This document shows, one piece after another, positions 1 to 58,200 of a DNA stretch of 64,000 nt. The translations under genes and the position numbers were made by a program. The notes under the pieces are model-generated. The model was not told the DNA's origin and searched no databases. It saw nothing but the letters and a program-made list of their open reading frames with translations. Source of the DNA: Nageia nagi (taxonomy: Eukaryota; Plantae; Pinophyta); the NCBI GenBank assembly GCA_050084985.1, contig JBITNC010000001.1, positions 83,638,001-83,702,000 of the forward strand. Reading direction: 5' to 3'. Within the stretch, counting starts at the first letter, position 1; each line of letters starts with the position of its first letter.

Positions 1-705
1 TTTAGATACAGTGTGCCTTATGAATTGTTCAAGGATAATGGTCCTAGATGTAAAGATAATGAAGTTAAGGAATTTTGTGTTAAATATCATATTGATTGGA
101 AATTATTTACCCTATGTTATTGTCAAGGTAATGATCAATCCAAAGCTTCTGACAAGATCATTAAGATTATCTTATCCAAAATCATTATAAAACATGGTAA
201 ATATTGGCATGAAAAACTCCTTTATGCTTTGTGGACCTATAAAACAATTATAAGAACATCTATAGGGGAAACCCCTTTCTCCATAATGTATGGTGATGAA
301 GTTGTAGTTCCCCTTGAATTAGAAATCCCATCTCTTCGTGTGTCACTAGATTACCTCATTCCTAATGAGGATAGAAGGAAAGCTAGATTAGCACAACTAG
401 GGGTCCTAAATGAAAAATAGGTTAATGATATAAAACACCTTCATGTCTATCATTCTAGAATCCAAAAAGACTATAGCAAAAAGATCAAGCATAAAGAATT
501 CAAATTTGGTGATCTGGTATTAAAAGAAAATCTTGCCAACACTAAAGCTATGGAAAATGAAATAAAGCTAAGTTCAAACCTAATTGGATAGGCATTACAT
601 TGTCACTACAAAGTATGAAAAGATGTGTATAAATTGTCCATAATTGAATGTAAAGAAGAACATAATCCAATTAATGTTATTCATTTGAAAAAGTTTTATA
701 TCTAA
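1..705 (+). pseudogene. Degenerate integrase C-terminus of Ogre/Tat-type Ty3/Gypsy element (family A, copy 1)
   Basis: ORF 13-420 reads DNGP..., WHEKLLYALWTYKT..., GETPFSIMYGDEVVVPLELEIPSLRV. After the stop it continues as FKFGDLVLKEN...(frameshift) KFKPNWIG...PINVIHLKKFYI*. Confidence 0.9.
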
Positions 706-2795: not shown

Positions 2796-3149
2796 GGTTA
2801 AGTCAAAGATTTGGAATAGTCCCTCATGTAAGGGTGGTAATACTCACAAGATCACAATTAGTCTATAGGGTTTTGATAAGGAAGTACCTGAGTCACCATA
2901 CATGGAGCATTAAACTAGTGTTGAATAAGGATTTACAAATAGTTAGGTTTTATAGCCTCCTTATTTACGTATACTAAATTATGAATAAGCATATAAAAAT
3001 ATCATAATAATCTTGTAAGTTAGAAAGAAATAAACATCAAAAGAGTTAACTAAAAAAATACCTGCATTTCTAGTATTTCAAATGGTGAAAAGAATTTGGA
3101 CTCTAAGAATATGCCAAGCCTCCAACATGTAGCGTTAAAGACTTATATA

Positions 3150-4431
3150 TTTTTTTTTCAATATAAATTTGGGATGTTAAAACTCTTGTGTTTATTTAGA
3201 ATATCTTTAAAAATTTGAAATACCATCTTAGTATATTTTGTGGGATAAAGGTTCTTTCTTGGTAAGGGTAAATTTAAAGAGGTTTTTTATACAAGTATCC
3301 ACCTATTATTATAAATTTGAAATACTTTTGGTAACATCCTATGATTGTTTATTTTGATATTTTTAGGATCTTCTTGAATGCAACTTGGGTGGCTAAGAAA
3401 ATATTGTACACCATTTTCAACTATTAATATAATAAAAATATTTCTTAATTAAATCTAGTATAAAATTGTAGCATGTATATCAACATCCTTTTCTAATATT
3501 CCTATTTATTTCTAGGTTTGGGGAGAAACCTAATCCTAAAAACAACAAGCATTGTTTATTTTCAATTCCTAATTTCTTTAACATGTTATTTTTCTTGTAT
3601 TTGTCCTTCATTTGGATTCCCAACATATCTTTGATCTATATCTAGCTTCCTTGAAGCACTTTGTGTTATCCTATGATCACTCTTATGGATTTAAGTTTCT
3701 TCAAAATTTGATTGGCTTCCCAAAGGTAAGCTCTATCATATCAAATTCACCTATTTCCAACCATCATTCATAGGCCTTCCTTCCCTTATTTTTATGTCAT
3801 GAGCCTCCTCCTATAATAATAGAGTTGAACTATGTGGTCCCTTAGATCTTTCTAGATTGAGGGGCTCTTTCTTCCTTTTTTGTAGTAGCCACATTCCTAT
3901 TGATGAACTCTTTCTCATCTAATCTAGCCTCCACTTCCAATTTTAGTTGTTTATTAGCCATTTTTATATTCTTCTCCTCCTATTGTAGCTTTGATCACCA
4001 TTCTTGATGAGCAAGATATGAAATAGTGTTATGCCTAATCTAATTACATATGGAATATAGATAATTAATTTTTTCAAACCATAATTATTGGATCTACTTC
4101 CCTAAATTTGATTTGAACATCATATTCTTTGTAAGATTAACCCCAAATTCTACCATAGCATAAAATATTTCTTCTCTAAGTATAGTATGAGATTTCATGA
4201 CTTCATATACTATAATGGATTTACCAAAAGAGTTTATAATTCTTTCAATCATTTTCTAGTTCCAAAATTCAAAGGGAAGGTGTGGGAGAGTGGTCTAAAT
4301 TGGAGTAGTCATTATTTTTTCCTTGGAAGGGTTAAATCATGATTACCATTTCTTCAAGAATAACATCCTCTTTTAAAAAAACATTGAAAGCTAACCATGT
4401 AATCATAATCTTCTATATTATAAAAAATAAA
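3150..4431 (-). mobile_element. L1-type ORF1 (DUF4283) remnant without EN/RT, 5' part cut by LTR insertion
   Basis: Minus-strand translation ~4370-4100: RMLFLKKW*S*FNPSKEKIMTTPI*TTLPHLPFEFWN*KMIERIINSFGK. A T-run at ~3150-3158 may be the poly-A tail. Confidence 0.65.
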
Positions 4432-24831: not shown

Positions 24832-25900
24832 TTCTTCTCATGACCCTAAAATAATTCCTAATTTCAATTCTTTTTTATTACCCATTGTAGTATTTCCCTT
24901 TCCCTTTTCTATGAATTTGATTTCGTACATTGGTAGCTATCTCATTATCTCTTATTATTTTTCCTATGTATTGATCTCCATACATCTTCTTCCTTCTTTC
25001 TTCATTTAGTTTTTTTTTTTTGAATATTTCCTTTTTTATCTTTCTTATCAATCCTTTGTATAATGATCAAATCCTTTACAATAAGTGCATTAAAAAGGGA
25101 TATTCAAATACACCACCTCCTTCTCCCATATCCCTCAATCTTCTTCATTAGGAAAAATAATTTTCTAAGGTCTTTTGAGATTTCAATATTTATGCAAAAC
25201 AAAGCATCAATAATTTTTGTTTGATATCTAGTTCCTTTCCCTATTGACATCAATTACCCTAGTTCATTTTCAATCCTTACAATCATGCTTGTATTCCAAT
25301 ACTCTATCAGTACATTTCAAAGGATGATCAAGTTGGGATTAGGTTTATGTTCTTAGTATTTAGTATGAATCCTTTGTGCCAATGCTTAAGAACTAACCCT
25401 TTCCTACCAACAAACCAAGGGTTTATATCGAGGAATTTCTTGATATCTTCTTGAAGGGACAATTTAAAGAGAAAAAATTCTATTTTAAAGATCCATTAGC
25501 TCTACTCATCCTTTGGTATTCCAATATTTTGACATCCATTTTAAAATTCTTTCCAATCCTAGTATGATTCTAGCAAACCTCCTAACTAAAGTATTTTTTG
25601 ATGATCTATTTCATTGCTAAATTCTCCTTTGGCATTGTAATTTAAATTTTATTTTCTACTATCCTTGTTTGTATATCTACTTTTATCTCCTCAACTCATT
25701 TCTCTCTATCTTGCATAATAATATTAATTTAATTATACATTATCTTTATATTCCATCTATTCTATTCCCTTATCATTAAATAAAATGGATTATTTCCAAC
25801 TTTTGACTACATAGATAAGTGAATCCTTGATTGTGATGACCTAGAGCCCATGCCTTCATACCCCTTCATCTTCTCTCCATCTTAATCCAAAAGCCCTGGT
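24832..25900 (-). mobile_element. L1-type ORF1 (DUF4283) element split by the LTR element; 3' part at ~16353-16713
   Basis: Minus strand reads NTLVRRFARII...KWMSKYWNTKG...FFLFKLSLQEDIKKFLDINPWFVGRKGLVLKHWHKGF...IEYWNTSMIVRI. The pyrimidine-rich continuation left of 16714 ends at a T-run (~16354-16360). Confidence 0.7.
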
Positions 25901-49299: not shown

Positions 49300-52200
49300 A
49301 TTTTAATCAAATTCTTCTTAATTAAAATTTAATACACTTTCAAATGCTCAAGGGAATTAAGTCAATTTTCTTCCAAGAAAAACTATTAGTCCATGTATTT
49401 TTGTATAGAATATTATTTAATAATATACTCTTTGAAGAACATTCAAAGAAATAGGATTTCATTCTTGAGAGGTAAATGGCTTTCATTTCATAGATAAGAC
49501 AAAAGGGTCTACTTATTTAGAGGTGAATTGTAGTGTGATTCTCTTAAAGAGCATGAGGGATTTGAGTACTCCAATCCCAATGTAAATTATTGAGAATATT
49601 TAATAGGATTTGTTAAATGATGTTATTGGTTGCATCATATTAATCATTTCCTTATGGATAGTAAGAAGTAAAATAACTCTGCTTCATATAATATGCATTA
49701 AAAGCCTTTGAGCATCTTAATTTTTAAACAATTTTTCATTATCTATTACATTGTATTCAAGGATTCAAAATTAACAAATGCTATAATTCTCTATGAACTC
49801 AACGGTTTTAGGTCCTTTCATAGAAATGAGAGGATAAAATTAAAAAAATTTCATAAAACACATAATTTCTATGATGATAAACTTATGTCCCCAAGAGGAT
49901 ATAGGAGATATCTATCAAATAAGATCCAAACACAAGTGAGAAAATTGCCACATAATAAAATGGCTTAGATATTTGAGATGGTTGGTGTACCAAGTTAGTA
50001 TTCTACCAACACTTGAAATATTTCATTATATATTCACCACAATCACATTCCATGGTATCCTAGTAATATACTATATGCAATAGATGCTTTATGATGGTAG
50101 GATCACTAAAATAGCTATCAAAAATCCAATTATAAACATAAGAGATATCTATTTATGAATCAACCCACTCAATGAACCTCGATGAAAAATAATCATATGC
50201 TTCATGGAAAATAAAATCCTTAAGAATACAACATTGAAAAGCTATCATCTTGAAGGAACAATGACCTAAGGGGCATAAATTATGAGAAATCACCCCATTC
50301 TTAAATAAATTGCCCAATTGAGTATATAATAAATCTTTCTCTTTAGATGTAAGATATAGGAATTCACTTTTTTTAAGATCTAAATCAAGATATAATTGTT
50401 AGACATGGAAATTTGTACATGAATGAATTTTTTATCTATGTTAGGTGGTATCATGAATCCAAGGGATGACATAACATGAAAAAAATAATTTAAGGTACCT
50501 TCAATATCACACTTGTTAAATGATTGCAACAATTTCTAAATAAATTTCATATATCTTTAAATTTTTGCCTCCTTGCATTGATAAATACTCTATCTAATTC
50601 AATGAGGAATAAATAGAAAATAATAATATTTACCTTTTTAAACATTATCTTTTGAGTTTTCTTAAATTCTAGTGCCATGATCTCAAAGTCTTCAATTTTG
50701 CTTGTATATAAAGAATATAATTTAAATAAATAAGTGATAGAAATCCTATCACCTATGATGGAAACTACATTAGAACCTCCCTATTGATTAAAGTGAGAGC
50801 CATCAAAATAAATTATCATGTCCCAATCATTTTCTAGGTTGGGATTAACTTTTTTCTCCTCAAGCTATTAAATATTCTCTTTTAAAAGCTCAATATTTAG
50901 GGTTTTTTAATGTTGCAATGGTGTTTCAATAAGGTGTTATGCAATGTATTTCCCTTTGATTACTTTCTCATTAATAAATTATAAGTCAAATTTTATGAGT
51001 AATATTATCCCTTTCGATGTAAAATTATGATAGTATATTTGATTCATTGTCTCTAGGTGGAACAAATTTACTAACAATACATGTGTAGTTTTATTAATCA
51101 TATGATGTTAAATATTTTTAGTTAAAAAGATTATTTCTAGGAATACTTTTCAATTTCAATATACTTATCTTTAGCATAGATTACTAGAATATGAAAAATG
51201 TAGTAAACTACTTGTTCTTTATTAGCTTTGTTCTTCTATACAAGTATGGACACTAAGGAAAAATTACTAGATAAAATAGATAGCAAGAAATGAACACTAG
51301 TCTAATGAGGAGTTAATACTCAATATGATGTAAGATAATATTTTATATCCTCAAATGAAACCTAGCATTGTTCATCCAATAATTGAGAGATAAATTATCT
51401 AATATATTGAATATTTTCTTATAAACTATGAAGTTGTTTCAGGTTGGAAGGGGGTGACATATCCATGATTGTCTTAATCTTATTAGAATACAACTCAATT
51501 CATTTTTTTTATAGAATAAAACCTATATTTTTATTGATATCATGCCAAATATGCATTACTTTATATTTGATCTAACATTATACTACAATAGCCCATCAAA
51601 AATATTTCAAAATGCCTTTATGTATTAGGCCCTAGTTTTTTATGTGTTCAGTAAGTTAGCCATATAATCCTTAATAATATCATGTATATAATTATGGAAT
51701 ATGTAAGTCATTACTCACTAGTTTATGTATGAACATTTTTTCTCCAAAAGGTATGACTTTGTAATAAAAAATTTATCATGTTGTAGAAAATACCATTTGG
51801 TGTTGGTCCTTAGGGGAAATTTGAATCCAATTATATCCTAGGAATCCATTCATATGGAAAATCATCTCATTGCCTATTGTGCAATCAACTAGGCTATCAA
51901 TATTTAGCAAAGTAAAATCATCCTTTGGGAAAGCCTTATTGACATCTTGAAATTTTATGGAATTTAGAATCTTACCATTTAGTATATTTATAGGTACCAT
52001 ATTATAATTATATTATGAGTAGAAAATTGGTTGAATGAACTTCACATATTGAATATTATATAACTCTTATTTTATCATAGGTTAAAAATGCAATGCATTT
52101 TGTGTAGCATATTATTAACAAGTTTTTCATTCTTATCTAAACCTAGGTTGTGTACATACTAAATTAGTGTCTAAGCCATACATTCTATTATATGATCAAG

Positions 52201-55200
52201 GAAATACATTGACATACTGTTTAAAAATATTGGTAAAGTTATCACTTACTCATTTAGTTAGGATTTTAATTAATTGGATAATTCATGGATTTTTTGGATT
52301 ATCACTAGGATCAATATTGATGGTATCATTTATCAATATATCCAAATCATCTTCCAATTGATTGGCCACATAAATCCAATTATGATAATAATTAATATTA
52401 TGCTCTAATTATGCTTGATAATCTTAATTTGTAGAGATTATATTAATTACAAATGGTAAATAATATAAAATGTTATTATATGAGAAAATTCTAAAGTGGT
52501 TTCATCTACCATAAGATCAAGTAATGTGGGTTGCTTATCTAATTCTAAAGAACTTATGTACTCGATATAGATCATATTTAATGATTGTAGAAACCATAGT
52601 CTATCCTATTAAATTTTCATATTCACATCATGAATCTTCAAATTTACATATGCTTTATTCTAATGGTGTTCATGATTAAGGGTTACTCAAGTCCTTCATG
52701 ATTGATTACATGAATTACCAAGAAGTCAAAGGTGTGAGAAATATAAGCTCAAGATGGAATGCTAAAAATACAAAGTACATAGAGATTTATGTGGGTAACA
52801 TGCACAAATGCATCAAAACCTATCATTCTTAGGCTCTATAAATTTTGAAAAGTATATAATTACAAACCAATCATTGAATAAACATATAATAGTTTCCATA
52901 GGTAACATATCTAGAAGCCCTTTAGTCTCTCCTATTTAATGATTTTTATGAAGATGATGTGATAATGGATATTATATATAGAAATATTATCTCTAAGGCC
53001 AAGATATTTTTGACACATCAATCTAAATAAATAGTTTATGTCAATAAATATTTGATTAAATAGTGTAGACTGAGGCCAAGATATCTAGAAGCATTTTGAT
53101 TAACTCAATATTTGATTCTTCCTTTATAAATATATGTCACACATAAATCTAAATAAATAGTTTATATCAATAAATATCCATACTCCTTATGTACCAATAA
53201 ATTTTAATTAAATACTTTTCAACAACCATCCTATGAATCTTCACCAATAATCAAGCAAATTACAAATTTTCTATGATGAGAAAGAACGTAGGATGTCTTT
53301 GTAATGTTTCCCTTCATAACAATAATATAAAAGAGATTAATTCCATGCCTGATGGATCATGTCCATATCTCATATCTCTAATTTTATTTTGCATTTATCT
53401 TAATTTTTTCCTTACTAATGCTCTTCAAGTAACATAACTGCTAAATTAGGTGGTTATACAAGTTACTCTCTAGGTAAAATAATTCTAAGATTAGGAGTAT
53501 ATACTTATTGTTACATTAGTTCTCTTCATACAAGAGAATATTTAGATCATCTGGTTATACTAAATATTATTTATGACTAAGCATATACCATAGTCATCTC
53601 TTGAATCTTGCAACATTTCTATATAGAGAGGAATAAGAATATATTATTATCATCATCCAATTCTATGATTTTGTAATATTCAATGTGTATCATTTGCATA
53701 ATACATTTAAAATTATCATCTTCAAATGATTCATATTGTAGAAAATAATGAATCATATACACTTTAAATAATTCAATAATAATTAAAAAATTTTAACTTT
53801 ATAATATCAAGATATCCCATCACTATGTTACATCTACATAATCTTATCCAATATCATGAGGCATTGGTGTAGTGGTAAGATCTCTTGGTCTTTATTTGGG
53901 ATGTCACAAGTTCCAATCCCACAAGCTAAGAGAGGAAACTATACACATGTGAAGTGATATTAAAGGAAGCGGTAAAACTTGAGATGCTGGTAGAGGTTGA
54001 CCAAGGTTTCCTACATAATAGGTTATAGGACTCCCCATTACACACACATGGATATATAATCCTCAAAATTTTACCCTAAAACTTTAAAAATAATCCAAAA
54101 TTTATAATTTTTATTAGGAGCAACAAAATCATGGGTGAATTATTTCAAAATACTGGGAGGCTATTATTAAGCAAATTACAACTTAGCAAAGTTGTAATCT
54201 TATGGAAATATAATAAAAAAATGTAAACACGATGAAAAAATCAAGATTGTTACCTAAACCAAAGCTCCTCAATGAATGGAGAAGCATGTTGATGTAGGAA
54301 AAGCTATTTGTAGATGAAGAAATTAGGATGGTACTAGAACCATAATTCTCTAAAGATAAGGTTAGCATATTAATTTCAAAAAGTATAATTGAGAAGTAAG
54401 AGGATGGGCTAAAATCAGCCCTTAAACATTGATCAATTTGTTGGAGTATGACCCACTCCAGATTTGATTCAAAGTTGGATGAAGGAAATATGGTGTACAA
54501 AAGGGTTGGTATCTCTAATTGCACTTCTAAGATAATTCATGTTATTCAAATTCTACTTCGATAAAGACCTACAAAAAGTAATAGAGATGGGTCCATGGTT
54601 CCTTGGGAATAAAGGATTAGTTAACAAATAATGGGAGAAAACTTTCTCCCCTAAATTTAAAAATTTCAATCTCATTCAAATATGGATCTCACTACCTAGA
54701 CTTCACCTATCATGTTGGCATGCATGTAAAATAGTGCGACTTGCAAAAGCAATTATATCCCTTATCACAATTGAGCGAGCAATAAGATTGAAACTTCAAT
54801 TTACACATACAATATTCATGGTCAATTTAGATATTTCCAAACCTTTTAAGGAGATAAAATTAAAAATAGAATATGGAAGATAATGGATGCAACCTATTAT
54901 ATATGCAAACATGCTAGTACAATATGGAATTTGCATGAATTATGAGCATTATGCAAAGGAATGACCAAAAAAAAAAGAGAAGGGATGAAGAAAGGAGAGA
55001 AAAACAAAAGCAAAAAAAAGGATACTCAAGAAAAATAGGAAGGGAAAGGGTGGAAAATTTTTCAAAAAAAAAGCAAGGAAAAATCAGAAGAATATGATTG
55101 AAATGTGGACAAAATAAACCATGATAGAAAAATAATCAACTCCATAGGAATTCCAATAGAAGGGAACAACCACATCAAACCCTTATGTGGTACTAGAAAT

Positions 55201-58200
55201 TTTAGAAGGAATAAAGAATAAATAGATTACTAATTATAATATTTAGAAGATGCGACAACAAATATGGAAGTCATGGAAGGGGATGAAGGAGAAATAATTA
55301 GGAGGGTGATAAAAAAAGTTGAGGAATGCAAATAGTCAAGTAACAAAAATGTAGTAAGAAGAAGAACAAGATATAGGAATCCCACAAAGAAAAATAATTA
55401 ACTATAGAAAGATGATAAATGTTGAAAAGGTACATGTGGGTAGACCATACTAAGGACATACTAGAGAAAAAGCCCACCAAACATGATATAGTGAATGTCA
55501 AGTAATTCACTTTTCATCATATCAACAAATCTTAGCCCACCATTGGGCTAAACAAAAGATTTACAAATTAGAATATTCTACAAATAAAGAGGTAATTGGA
55601 TTATATCTCAATTATACTTCAAATGTATTTTGACTACAATTTGATGATTTTTTAATAATAAAATTTGTAGAGTAGGTTGAATTAGGGATACCAATAGGTT
55701 GTTGCTAGGTAGCACTTGAACTTATTTTGTTAGTAGTTTTTATGGTAATTTATGTTAACTACTACTAGGTTTAGCTAGGTAGTGGTTTCCTATTTTTAGA
55801 AACCATTTTATGATTATTTTTATTTTCAGAGAAAATCCCTCATTTCTTTTTGATAGTATAATTTACCCTTATTATCCAAAAATATAATCTTATCCAAAAA
55901 AGAAAGATTCAACATCCCATTCAACAATTTCAATGGGATTCTCCTAGTTAGTATGGCTTTTGCAACCCAAACCTCTTTTATAAATTTAAAAATGAAAATT
56001 GATTTAGTTACATATATTACACGTTTCCTTTAGATAAAAAGCCCATACCCTCACTAATGATATCTATGGGATCATAAATAGGTTAAACTTCAATAAAATG
56101 GTTCCTTAGGAGCCAATGGTAATGAATCTAAGATGGGAAATCTATTCCTACATAAATAAATAGTGTTTGGTTTGGAGGATTAAAAAAACACTAACTAACC
56201 AACAATAATAAATAGATAATTATGATCAACTTTATGGATGGAAGAATATAAAAATCATCATCATATTTCTCAACATTATAAGGAATTGAAATAAATAGTA
56301 AACTTTATGATGGAATTGAAAATAGGTTGATCATAGGATTTAGAAATTGATAATACCTTGTTTGAGAAGATAATGAAGTACTATGTAATGTATTTTTGTG
56401 ATTTTTCCTCTAATAATTATTTATCCTCAAGATTCATTTGTATATGTGGAGATGTGGATGAAGTTATGGGGGATGGTAGTGGTGAGATTGGAAAACTAGA
56501 AGGTGATGTGGAGGAGTATATAATGGGATTGAAGATTGGTTTCTTCTTTGCATGATATGAATAATAATATTTATATGAGGTATTATGATATAGCTTATAA
56601 AAATGAGTATTTTGATGAGATGTTGGATGATAAATTAAGGAAGGGGGTCTAGAGGAATACAAGGATGCTGATGGGCGAGATGAAATATTGGGTGATAAAG
56701 TAGAAGCAAAATTGGTAGGGGAAATATTTTAAGATAGAAAAGGTAATCTATAGGTGAATTAAATATGATTACAATTAGATAATGGATCTTCATCAATATT
56801 TATACAGTGAATGAGATCCTCATGAGCATATTTGAGATAGCTATGGAGTATTGAAGATACACACTACATTTCCTATTTCAAGGTTTTTCAAAAAGTATAT
56901 TTACTTATTTTCTCCCTTTATAACATGTAATAATTTATGCACCATTTTTAATATAACTATAATGGGTAACACTATTGTTACTAATGTTGGGCATAAGGTA
57001 TCATTAAATGGTCTTAGTTGTAAAGCTTATTTAGATAAATATGATAGTGGAAACTTCAAATGATGTAAAAAAATTGAAGAGATAATATTTGATTGAATAA
57101 AAATAATTAATGAATACTATATTAAAAGTTTTCTCATCCACATTATCAATAATACATATCAGATAATCTAGACCTCTAAAACCCTAAAGTTTTATAAGAT
57201 TAGAATCATAGAACTTTGTGTTTACTGATTATAAGTATTTTTGTTTCTAATAAATGTATAAACATTTTTTAAAGTTATTGATATATAATTATATATATTC
57301 TAATAGTTTATTCATCACCTATTGATGAGGATTAGATTGTTGCAATAAATCAAATAGAGATAACTTTATTAGTACTGACTTCAAGTAATTACTCAAAGAA
57401 ACCATCAATGGAACTCTCATCCTCTAAGGATGTGGGATATGTGAGGCATAATTATTATGATTAAGTGGCTCTAAAGAACAGTTATGGTTCTATTACTATA
57501 TTTTGTCTTATGTTTATGGTTTTTATCCTTGGGCTTTTTTATCTCTAGTCACAATGTTAACCATTCATACAAATATATGCTAGAGGTTCTTATTATATAC
57601 CATATCATTAGAAGTACCCATAATTGATACATTATTTCCTTTCTCTTACCATGTAATCCATTGAATATGATAATAATATATCATTAAATTTTTATTTATA
57701 ATGGTAAGGTGATTATACATATATAGCTTTCCATTATCAAGCACATCTTGACTACATGCTTTAGGTATCAATATTTATCAGCTTCATGTCCTCTTTGGGG
57801 ATGGTAAATGTGATATTAAGTTTCCTTATACCATAATGATTTCTCTAAATTTGGATATTTATATTTTATATTAGGTATAGTAATCATTTAATTCTCATAT
57901 AATCTTCTAAAATCTACTGCTAGGGGTTTTTGTAGTTATGTAAACTATTGTTGAGGATTGACCATTATCTTCACTTATATTTCCTATTATCTCCAAGTAG
58001 GAAAAGATTCAAAGGGAAATATAAAATAAATTCTTATATAGGATCTTTTTTCTATTTGAAGGGGATAAATAATTGATACTTTGTTAGCTAGTTATTTCTT
58101 ATTCTATAGAACCCCTTATTATTTTTAATAATATTTTAGTAATTATCCTTCTTTTTTAGTTTTACTTCCCTATCTTGGATTTTAATATTTATAATCCATA
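49300..58200 (-). mobile_element. Long degenerate Ogre/Tat gag-pol (gag, protease, G-patch-like, RT, RH, aRH, integrase) with nested insertions
   Basis: gag YHPQRGHEADKY*YLKHV..DVLDN (~57740-57810). Protease region LRPFNDTLCPTLVTIVLP...LHVIKGE (~56900-57040). RT DVNKAFPKDDFTLLNIDSLVD...GFLGYNWIQISPKDQHQMVF (51776-52000). aRH WDMIIYFDGSH (~50800). Confidence 0.75.
53852..55883 (+). mobile_element. Complete 2-kb retroposon: tRNA-like head + L1 ORF1 (DUF4283, zinc knuckle) + A tail, no EN/RT
   Basis: TSD ATAATCTTATCCAA at 53838-53851 and 55884-55897. A box TGGTGTAGTGG at 53865-53875 and B box GTTCCAATCC at 53910-53919. ORF1 reads DQFVGV*PTPDLIQSWMKEIW...KVIEMGPWFLGNKGL...IWISLPRL...VNLDISKP...YGICMNYEHYAKE. 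Tail TTATCCAAAAA. Confidence 0.8.

What the first reader, a model, noticed from the sequence alone, without database searches (positions are those of the whole stretch)
53838..55897. tRNA-headed, ORF1-only retroposon moved as a single unit (SINE-LINE hybrid)
Seen: a perfect 14-bp TSD (ATAATCTTATCCAA) encloses Pol III A and B boxes 34 nt apart just inside the 5' end, a ~350-nt leader, an apparently full L1 ORF1 (DUF4283, zinc knuckle, basic tail), a short 3' UTR and TTATCCAAAAA. There is no endonuclease or RT. It interrupts an Ogre/Tat gag-pol that resumes on both sides. Established: SINEs are non-coding and L1s use Pol II promoters with ORF2. Inference: either a protein-coding SINE-like family supplying its own RNA chaperone while borrowing L1 ORF2, or a one-off template-switch chimera like U6-L1. 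This is the best candidate for an undescribed system in the window.
Basis: partly seen in the sequence, partly recalled or inferred. Interest (0 to 1): 0.85.

Follow-up and report, generated by a model that had tools for sequence, protein, structure and literature searches.

The report
SINE beside an ORF1-only half-L1
The 2-kb stretch is most likely two dead plant jumping elements lying head to tail, a short tRNA-type SINE and a separate ORF1-only "half-L1", and not a new protein-coding SINE that moved as one piece.

Summary
There is an exact 14-bp direct repeat at 53838-51 and 55884-97. Pol III A and B boxes sit just inside the left end. A DUF4283/zinc-knuckle ORF1 remnant follows, and there is no endonuclease or RT.

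The two parts belong to separate repeat families.
- **SINE:** 53855-54087 is a roughly 233-bp SINE that also occurs alone and as head-to-tail dimers in public reads.
- **Half-L1:** about 54096-55883 is a copy of an ORF1-only "half-L1" whose full length is about 1.9 kb. Three other copies with 5' flanks, from metagenome contigs, show no detectable head.
- **ORF1 state:** it is broken, with 7 stops and frameshifts, in this copy and in all four others.
- **Pol III:** conserved T-runs would stop Pol III long before the 3' end.
- **Junction:** it holds an A-run and then ATAATC+CAAAA, which is the outer repeat minus TTATC. This looks like a third copy of the target.

My reading and odds:
- two successive insertions at one target, about 0.6;
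- a one-off template-switch chimera, about 0.2;
- a composite family, about 0.1.

The scan had already reported half-L1 families on other DNA of this genome (s1-846259).

The parts
53838..53851 (+). Left copy of the 14-bp direct repeat ATAATCTTATCCAA (target-site duplication). It is followed by 3 filler bases, TAT, at 53852-53854.
   Evidence: Exact match to 55884-55897. With up to 1 mismatch, shuffles of the window give 0.24 matches against 3 found.
53855..54087 (+). tRNA-type SINE of about 233 bp, full length at its 5' end. Box A is at 53865-53875 and box B at 53909-53919. The 3' region reads GATATATAAT..TTTTACCCTAAAACTTTAA.
   Evidence: Contigs from three public runs match from 53855-53861 to 54079-54087 and then run on unlike the window. 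Head-to-tail dimer joints go from 54079-54087 back to 53855-53864. The A+B box pattern is unique in the window. No tRNA call from ARAGORN or Rfam.
54086..54102 (+). Junction zone AAAAATAATCCAAAATT. It is an A-run (the SINE tail) followed by ATAATC+CAAAA, which is the outer repeat with TTATC missing. I read it as a third, damaged copy of the target.
   Evidence: It shares the exact 8-mer ATCCAAAA and the 6-mer ATAATC with 55884-55899. Random local 17-mers reach this score in 0.9-1.8% of trials. The 10-mer at 54086-95 matches 55880-89 at 9 of 10 positions.
54096..55883 (+). 5'-truncated copy of an ORF1-only 'half-L1' non-autonomous LINE. The start is uncertain between 54096 and 54117. The conserved ATG is at 54232. 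DUF4283 spans 54452-54880, the decayed CCHC knuckle 54884-54961, and the basic tail 54989-55114. Further ORF1 remnants run to about 55450. An untranslated 3' part follows, ending in the family's terminal block at 55852-55883 (..GATAGTATAATTTACCCTTATTATCCAAAAAT).
   Evidence: It aligns at 73-77% identity with L001, L002, L003 and L004 from 54117-54173 (54472 for the short contig L003) to 55881-55915 (L003 ends at 55304). All four complete copies share the 3' end. Pfam hits are, with relatives. The ATG is invariant in four copies. Read depth is high across the whole part and about zero in the flanks.
55884..55897 (+). Right copy of the 14-bp direct repeat. It is followed by AAAAAG, so the target read ..TTATCCAAAAAAG, much like the element's own 3' end.

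Best explanation
The stretch holds two separate, dead, non-autonomous non-LTR retroposons lying head to tail in the same orientation.

(1) The first is a roughly 233-bp SINE with Pol III A and B boxes (53855-54087) and a short A tail.

(2) The second is a 5'-truncated copy (about 54096-55883) of an ORF1-only 'half-L1' family. Its full length is about 1.9 kb. It carries only a plant-L1-type ORF1 (DUF4283, CCHC knuckle and basic tail) and must borrow endonuclease and RT from an autonomous L1, as HAL1 does in mammals.

They most likely arrived in two successive target-primed insertions at the same target, giving the layout target-SINE-target-halfL1-target. The outer two target copies are the exact 14-mers. 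The middle copy, at the junction, has lost TTATC. The order of the two events is not resolved.

Shown: the two families exist separately, the boundaries of each, the decay of ORF1, and the T-runs. Inferred: that there were two events rather than one.
For: - Read contigs at 80% likeness or more give about zero depth in both flanks and high depth from about 53855 to about 55900.
- The SINE unit stops at 54079-54087 in stand-alone contigs. It also forms direct SINE-SINE dimers.
- Four metagenome contigs carry the ORF1 element. Three of them have 5' flanks. Their likeness to the window starts only at 54117-54173, and BLAST finds no head. Smith-Waterman scores against shuffles stay below z = 2. ARAGORN and Rfam find nothing.
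- All the complete copies end in the same block..TTTACCCTTATTATC(C)A(n)T.
- The junction zone has an A-run followed by ATAATC+CAAAA. It matches the local target, with chance P of 0.009-0.018.
- In L004 a 3'-end-like motif plus TACAATAT..ATC upstream of the element repeats that element's own 3' end and flank (P = 0.04). This suggests that stacking at one target recurs.
- There are 15 T-runs of 4 or more on the + strand inside the unit, the first at 54069 and 54108. Five are conserved in all four copies and 11 in at least three.
- DUF4283, often with zf-CCHC_4, is the dominant ORF1p domain of plant L1s (PMC5203782).
- ORF1-only non-autonomous LINEs such as HAL1, HeT-A and Ag-Sponge are a known class (PMC5786205).
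Against: - The pair is flanked by one perfect 14-bp repeat, which is what a single event predicts.
- The two-event reading needs the same nick site to be used twice. It also needs either a 5-bp deletion in the middle copy or an unusually short 6-bp TSD.
- The middle motif (TAATCCAAAAT) also resembles the family's own 3' end (TTATCCAAAAAT). It could therefore be a SINE tail, or the read-through flank of a SINE source gene, rather than a target copy.
- SINE-SINE dimers without spacers in the reads suggest that template jumping may be common in this system.
- Four unchecked first-reader notes in the same genome describe 'tRNA-headed ORF1-only' units of 1.87-2.03 kb.
- The other copies I could fetch come from metagenome contigs of unknown species.
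Confidence: 0.6

Rival explanations
1. One-off chimera made in a single target-primed reverse transcription. The borrowed L1 RT copied a half-L1 RNA from its 3' end. Before reaching, or on reaching, the 5' end it jumped to the 3' end of a SINE RNA and copied that to its 5' end. One TSD then encloses both parts, as in U6/L1 chimeras.
For: - A single perfect 14-bp repeat encloses both parts.
- The SINE is complete at its 5' end and the half-L1 is truncated at its 5' end. That is the U6/L1 layout.
- Spacer-free SINE-SINE dimers in the reads fit frequent template jumping.
- The spacer AAAAA+TAATCCAAAA+TTT could be the tail, source-locus flank and U-run of a Pol III read-through SINE transcript.
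- An earlier follow-up in this genome read another half-L1 copy as an RNA chimera (s1-855832).
- U6/L1 and LINE template-jump chimeras are documented, judging by titles and abstracts only (PMC4476161, PMC6789731, PMC2104539).
Against: - The spacer begins with ATAATC, the first six bases of the local TSD, and continues with CAAAA in register after a 5-bp gap. A chimera gives no reason for the junction to look like the new target.
- Classical chimeras fuse the parts directly, without an A tail between them.
Confidence: 0.2
2. A true composite family: a SINE-headed, ORF1-carrying retroposon that is transcribed and retroposed as a 2-kb unit. This copy would be one of many.
For: - Four other first-reader notes in the same genome describe 'tRNA-headed, ORF1-only' units of 1868-2034 bp (s1-859097, s1-859517, s1-858313, s1-860702). 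The window's unit is 2032 bp.
- The whole TSD-bounded stretch is repetitive in reads.
Against: - Three of three other copies with 5' flanks show no detectable head.
- Headless copies (L002 about 1.93-2.01 kb, L004 about 1.90-1.96 kb) have the same overall length. Length therefore does not separate the readings.
- The junction resembles the local target, which a daughter copy would not show.
- TTTT at 54069, TTTTT at 54108 and conserved T-runs in the body would stop Pol III.
- ORF1 is broken in all five copies, and the codon positions differ about equally (0.24/0.18/0.23).
- The other notes are unchecked and come from the same kind of reader.
Confidence: 0.1

Closest known systems
HAL1 ('half-L1') of mammals, with HeT-A and Ag-Sponge: ORF1-present non-autonomous LINEs
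   Same: It carries only an ORF1p-type gene between LINE-like ends and has no EN or RT. It is multi-copy, has TSDs and variable 5' truncation, and must be mobilised in trans (PMC5786205).
   Different: The ORF1 is the plant type (DUF4283 plus CCHC), not Transposase_22. The host is a plant; earlier follow-ups of this scan call it gymnosperm- or conifer-like. No autonomous partner was identified here, and no intact copy was seen.
Plant tRNA-derived SINEs (for example the families catalogued for angiosperms)
   Same: It is about 233 bp and has internal A and B boxes 33 nt apart near the 5' end. It has a short A tail, many dispersed copies, and possibly a LINE-like 3' end.
   Different: No tRNA homology is detectable by ARAGORN or Rfam. 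Frequent spacer-free head-to-tail dimers occur. The tail is very short. I found no described gymnosperm counterpart in the papers searched.
U6/L1 and other template-switch chimeric retrocopies
   Same: A Pol III small-RNA-type copy lies 5' of a 5'-truncated LINE-type copy. Both share an orientation and one flanking repeat.
   Different: Here an A-run and a target-like 11-mer lie between the two parts, and both parts are themselves retroposon families.
SVA-type composite retroposons
   Same: It would be a mosaic of SINE-derived and other parts mobilised by L1, if the composite family reading were true.
   Different: No shared junction has been shown in other copies. SVA is non-coding and transcribed by Pol II.

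Membership tests
tRNA-derived SINE | Internal Pol III box A and box B at tRNA-like spacing near the 5' end | tested here: met
   TGGTGTAGTGG at 53865 and AGTTCCAATCC at 53909. The majority of copies read GGTTCCAATCC. This is the only such pair in 64 kb; shuffles give a mean of 0.15.
tRNA-derived SINE | Short, non-coding, dispersed in many copies as a unit of its own | tested here: met
   Contigs match 53855-54087 and then diverge. Thousands of contigs were laid in three runs.
tRNA-derived SINE | Recognisable homology to a tRNA | tested here: not met
   ARAGORN finds 0 genes, and Rfam gives no tRNA hit at E up to 10. The element may simply be too decayed.
tRNA-derived SINE | 3' end shared with a partner LINE | tested here: inconclusive
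   GATA.TATAAT..TTTACCCT..AAAAAT is colinear with the half-L1 3' block. P is 0.02-0.03 only when gaps are cheap and 0.25 under ordinary gap costs.
ORF1-only non-autonomous LINE (HAL1-like) | Encodes an L1-type ORF1p | tested here: met
   DUF4283 hits on two colinear pieces. Close relatives score 44-60 bits, above the 27.2-bit cut-off. A CCHC remnant is present. DUF4283 is the plant L1 ORF1p domain (PMC5203782).
ORF1-only non-autonomous LINE (HAL1-like) | No ORF2 (EN/RT) | tested here: met
   No Pfam hit on the remaining open pieces. The unit is about 1.8-1.9 kb in all copies.
ORF1-only non-autonomous LINE (HAL1-like) | Repeated family with common ends, TSDs and 5' truncation | tested here: met
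   Four further loci at 73-84% identity share the 3' end, and their 5' starts vary. Read depth agrees. TSDs of the other copies are only weakly supported.
ORF1-only non-autonomous LINE (HAL1-like) | Ends shared with an autonomous L1 partner | not tested
   No autonomous L1 similar to it is present in the window, and none could be fetched.
ORF1-only non-autonomous LINE (HAL1-like) | ORF1 kept open or under selection in active copies | tested here: inconclusive
   All five copies have at least 4 stops in their best frame. Differences by codon position are 0.24/0.18/0.23. The longest open relative is 194 aa.
Template-switch chimera (U6/L1 type) | One TSD around a small-RNA copy fused to a 5'-truncated LINE | tested here: met
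Template-switch chimera (U6/L1 type) | Direct fusion, with no tail or target copy between the parts | tested here: not met
   An A-run and ATAATC+CAAAA lie at 54086-54100.
Composite 'coding SINE' family | The same head-body junction in several copies with different TSDs | tested here: not met
   None of the 3 other copies with 5' flanks carries a detectable head. The window's own genome could not be searched.
Composite 'coding SINE' family | Pol III can transcribe the whole unit | tested here: not met
   There are 15 T-runs of 4 or more. Five are conserved in all copies.

The most novel reading that the evidence does not exclude
SINE/half-L1 pairs are not accidents in this genome. There are two versions of this idea.

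(a) The partner L1 machinery prefers targets that look like its own 3' end (..TATCCAAAA) and re-uses the regenerated target copy. Its dependents would then pile up head to tail with a target copy between them.

(b) Some such pairs have been remobilised as 2-kb SINE-headed, ORF1-carrying composites. The four other 'tRNA-headed' notes would then be copies of such a family.
Probability: 0.15. Interest if true: 0.65.

Novelty: new member of a known kind. Interest (0 to 1): 0.3.

Why it matters
If my reading holds, this is ordinary repeat archaeology, and it removes a false lead: there is no evidence here for a protein-coding SINE.

It still documents two things that I did not find described in the papers searched:
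- a plant (reportedly gymnosperm) counterpart of mammalian HAL1, meaning an abundant ORF1-only L1 derivative;
- a roughly 233-bp SINE that may share its 3' end with that element.

Both are useful for repeat annotation of a very large, AT-rich and heavily decayed genome.

The hint that these elements stack at one target, which itself resembles their own 3' end, would bear on how plant L1 machinery chooses targets and templates.

Tried and rejected
- **ARAGORN and Rfam on the head and on the loci:** no tRNA.
- **blastn of the element against the window:** only the self hit.
- **tblastn:** only a distant DUF4283 relative at 25051-25586(-).
- **Homology of the window's head to the 5' regions of L001, L002 and L004:** rejected. 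BLAST finds nothing, and Smith-Waterman with transition-tolerant scoring gives z below 2.
- **Purifying selection on ORF1:** no clear signal.
- **TSDs for the other copies:** not significant for L001 or for L004 at the 5' end first assumed. L002 gives P = 0.06.
- **Host Ogre/Tat gag-pol:** no retroelement Pfam hit in the 20 flank pieces tested.
- **The look-up of encoding contigs:** closed, not run.
- **Collection scans:** the viral contigs and genome-contig scans, by protein and by a 21-mer of the head, found nothing.
- **The search of earlier findings by sequence:** blank.
- **Protein searches with the 83-aa piece:** only short, broken relatives.

I built no consensus and repaired no frame. 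Copies were only compared.
Full report
**What is there**

The window is AT-rich (26-32% GC around the finding), and differences between copies are mostly transitions.

The exact 14-mer ATAATCTTATCCAA stands at 53838-53851 and 55884-55897. Three bases after the left copy a repeat unit begins. It carries box A (TGGTGTAGTGG, 53865-53875) and box B (AGTTCCAATCC, 53909-53919). This A+B pattern occurs once in the 64 kb, against 0.15 expected from shuffles. ARAGORN and Rfam see no tRNA.

The coding remnant lies in the frame of 53840.
- Pieces 54536-54628 and 54632-54880 hit Pfam DUF4283 colinearly.
- A decayed knuckle follows. Relatives read C-x2-C-x4-H/Y-x4-C there, while the window has Y..C....H....stop.
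- A basic tail comes next (54989-55114), and C-terminal remnants run to about 55450 in shifted frames.
- There are 7 stops between 54404 and 55114.
- The ATG at 54232 is invariant in four copies but out of frame with the domain in this copy.
- No EN or RT was found.
- DUF4283 with zf-CCHC_4 is the dominant ORF1p architecture of plant L1s (PMC5203782).

**Two families, not one**

I laid contigs from three public runs on 53400-56300 at 80% likeness or more. Depth is about zero in both flanks. It rises at about 53855 and falls after about 55900, so the whole bounded stretch is repetitive.

The first 233 bp behave as a unit of their own.
- Contigs match 53855/53861 to 54080/54087 and then continue for hundreds of bases unlike the window.
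- Many "goes back" joints link 54079-54087 to 53855-53864.
- Once the unaligned ends of the unit are counted, the letters between those joints leave a spacer of about zero. These are direct SINE-SINE dimers.

A protein search with the 83-aa DUF4283 piece found only short, broken relatives. One of them led, through a metagenome scan, to four contigs, L001-L004.
- Their likeness to the window (73-77%) runs from 54117-54173 to 55881-55915 (L003, a 1-kb contig, covers only 54472-55304) and never includes the head.
- L002 and L004 share about 200 more bases 5' of that point at 61% identity. That region shows no significant likeness to the window's head (z below 2 against shuffles).
- All the complete copies end in the same block..GATA(A/G)TATAATTTACCCTTATTATC(C)A(n)T.

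The body is therefore a copy of an ORF1-only "half-L1" family whose full length is about 1.9 kb. In the window it is truncated by roughly 130-200 bases at its 5' end. The head is a separate SINE. An earlier follow-up of this scan reached the same half-LINE reading on other DNA of this genome (s1-846259).

**Could the pair function as a coding SINE?**

All five copies are broken, with at least 4 stops in the best frame. Differences between copies are spread almost evenly over codon positions: 0.24/0.18/0.23, similar to the variation seen in the non-coding control region.

On the + strand there are 15 T-runs of 4 or more inside the unit. These include TTTT at 54069 and TTTTT at 54108. Five runs in the body are conserved in all four copies and 11 in at least three. 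A Pol III transcript from the head would end near the SINE's own 3' end.

Kojima (PMC5786205) lists HAL1, HeT-A and Ag-Sponge as ORF1-present non-autonomous LINEs. He notes that the need to make ORF1p sets them apart from SINEs.

**One event or two?**

Between the SINE end (..CTTTAA, 54087) and the first body bases lies AAAAATAATCCAAAATT (54086-54102). After the A-run it reads ATAATC and then CAAAA. That is the outer repeat, with its following A's, minus TTATC.
- The exact 8-mer ATCCAAAA alone is reached by 0.9-1.8% of random local 17-mers.
- 54086-95 matches 55880-89 at 9 of 10 positions. A match that good arises in about 3-4% of random trials.

The layout target-SINE-target-halfL1-target arises if the second element used the same nick as the first.

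L004 hints that this recurs. Upstream of its element lies a 3'-end-like motif and then TACAATAT..ATC, which repeats the element's own 3' end and flank (P = 0.04).

Against this reading:
- The middle copy needs a 5-bp deletion, or else a 6-bp TSD.
- The motif also resembles the family's own 3' terminus (TTATCCAAAAAT), and the target itself does too.
- A Pol III read-through SINE transcript joined by template switching could give a similar spacer.
- Spacer-free SINE dimers show that something like template jumping, or tandem growth, does occur.

I put two events at about 0.6, a single-event chimera at about 0.2, and a composite family at about 0.1.

**Open lead**

Four unchecked first-reader notes describe "tRNA-headed ORF1-only" units of 1.87-2.03 kb elsewhere in this genome. 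Headless copies have the same length, so length does not decide between the readings. I could not read those loci.

**Limits**

- The single reads call returned contigs only, so copy number, bridging reads and expression could not be measured.
- The species of the runs and of the metagenome contigs is not known to me.
- The Ogre/Tat host claim is unconfirmed.

Noticed in passing
window 25051-25586 (-): A second, distant DUF4283 remnant (49% identity over 47 aa to the finding's ORF1, with no open frame). It lies inside the region another note calls recurrent ORF1-only elements (s1-859580).
   Followed up: partly
reads laid on window 53855-54087: The SINE unit often occurs as direct head-to-tail dimers with practically no spacer, tail or TSD between the units. 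These joints appear in several different contigs of two runs. The cause could be template jumping, a dimeric SINE, or tandem amplification.
   Followed up: no
L004 1969-2005 versus 3878-3915: Upstream of this half-L1 copy lies a motif like the family's 3' end, followed by TACAATAT..ATC. This repeats the copy's own 3' end and flank (P = 0.04). It is possibly another case of stacking at one target.
   Followed up: partly
window 55892-55915 versus L001 2150-2174: The 3' flanks of two independent copies are alike at the same offset (TCCA[A/G]AAA[A/G]GAAA.GAT.CA.CAT; P = 0.007 before correcting for six pairs). Three of four 3' flanks carry TCCA within about 12 nt. This could be target preference or a short 3' transduction.
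   Followed up: partly
window 51779-52012 (-): An open piece whose translation looks by eye like the LTR-retrotransposon RT motif region (..KAFPKDDF..L.NID.L..). It has no Pfam hit at E up to 0.1.
   Followed up: partly
L002 1053-1256 and L004 1947-2140: About 200 bp upstream of the strongly conserved body is shared by these two copies at only 61% identity, against 79% in the body. It is either a fast-decaying native 5' region of the half-L1 or another element lying upstream of both.
   Followed up: partly
window 166-179: ATTATCTTATCCAA, a one-mismatch copy of the 14-mer 53 kb away. It is probably chance.
   Followed up: no
L002 about 3110-3199: A (GT)n(GA)n microsatellite shortly after the half-L1 copy.
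   Followed up: no
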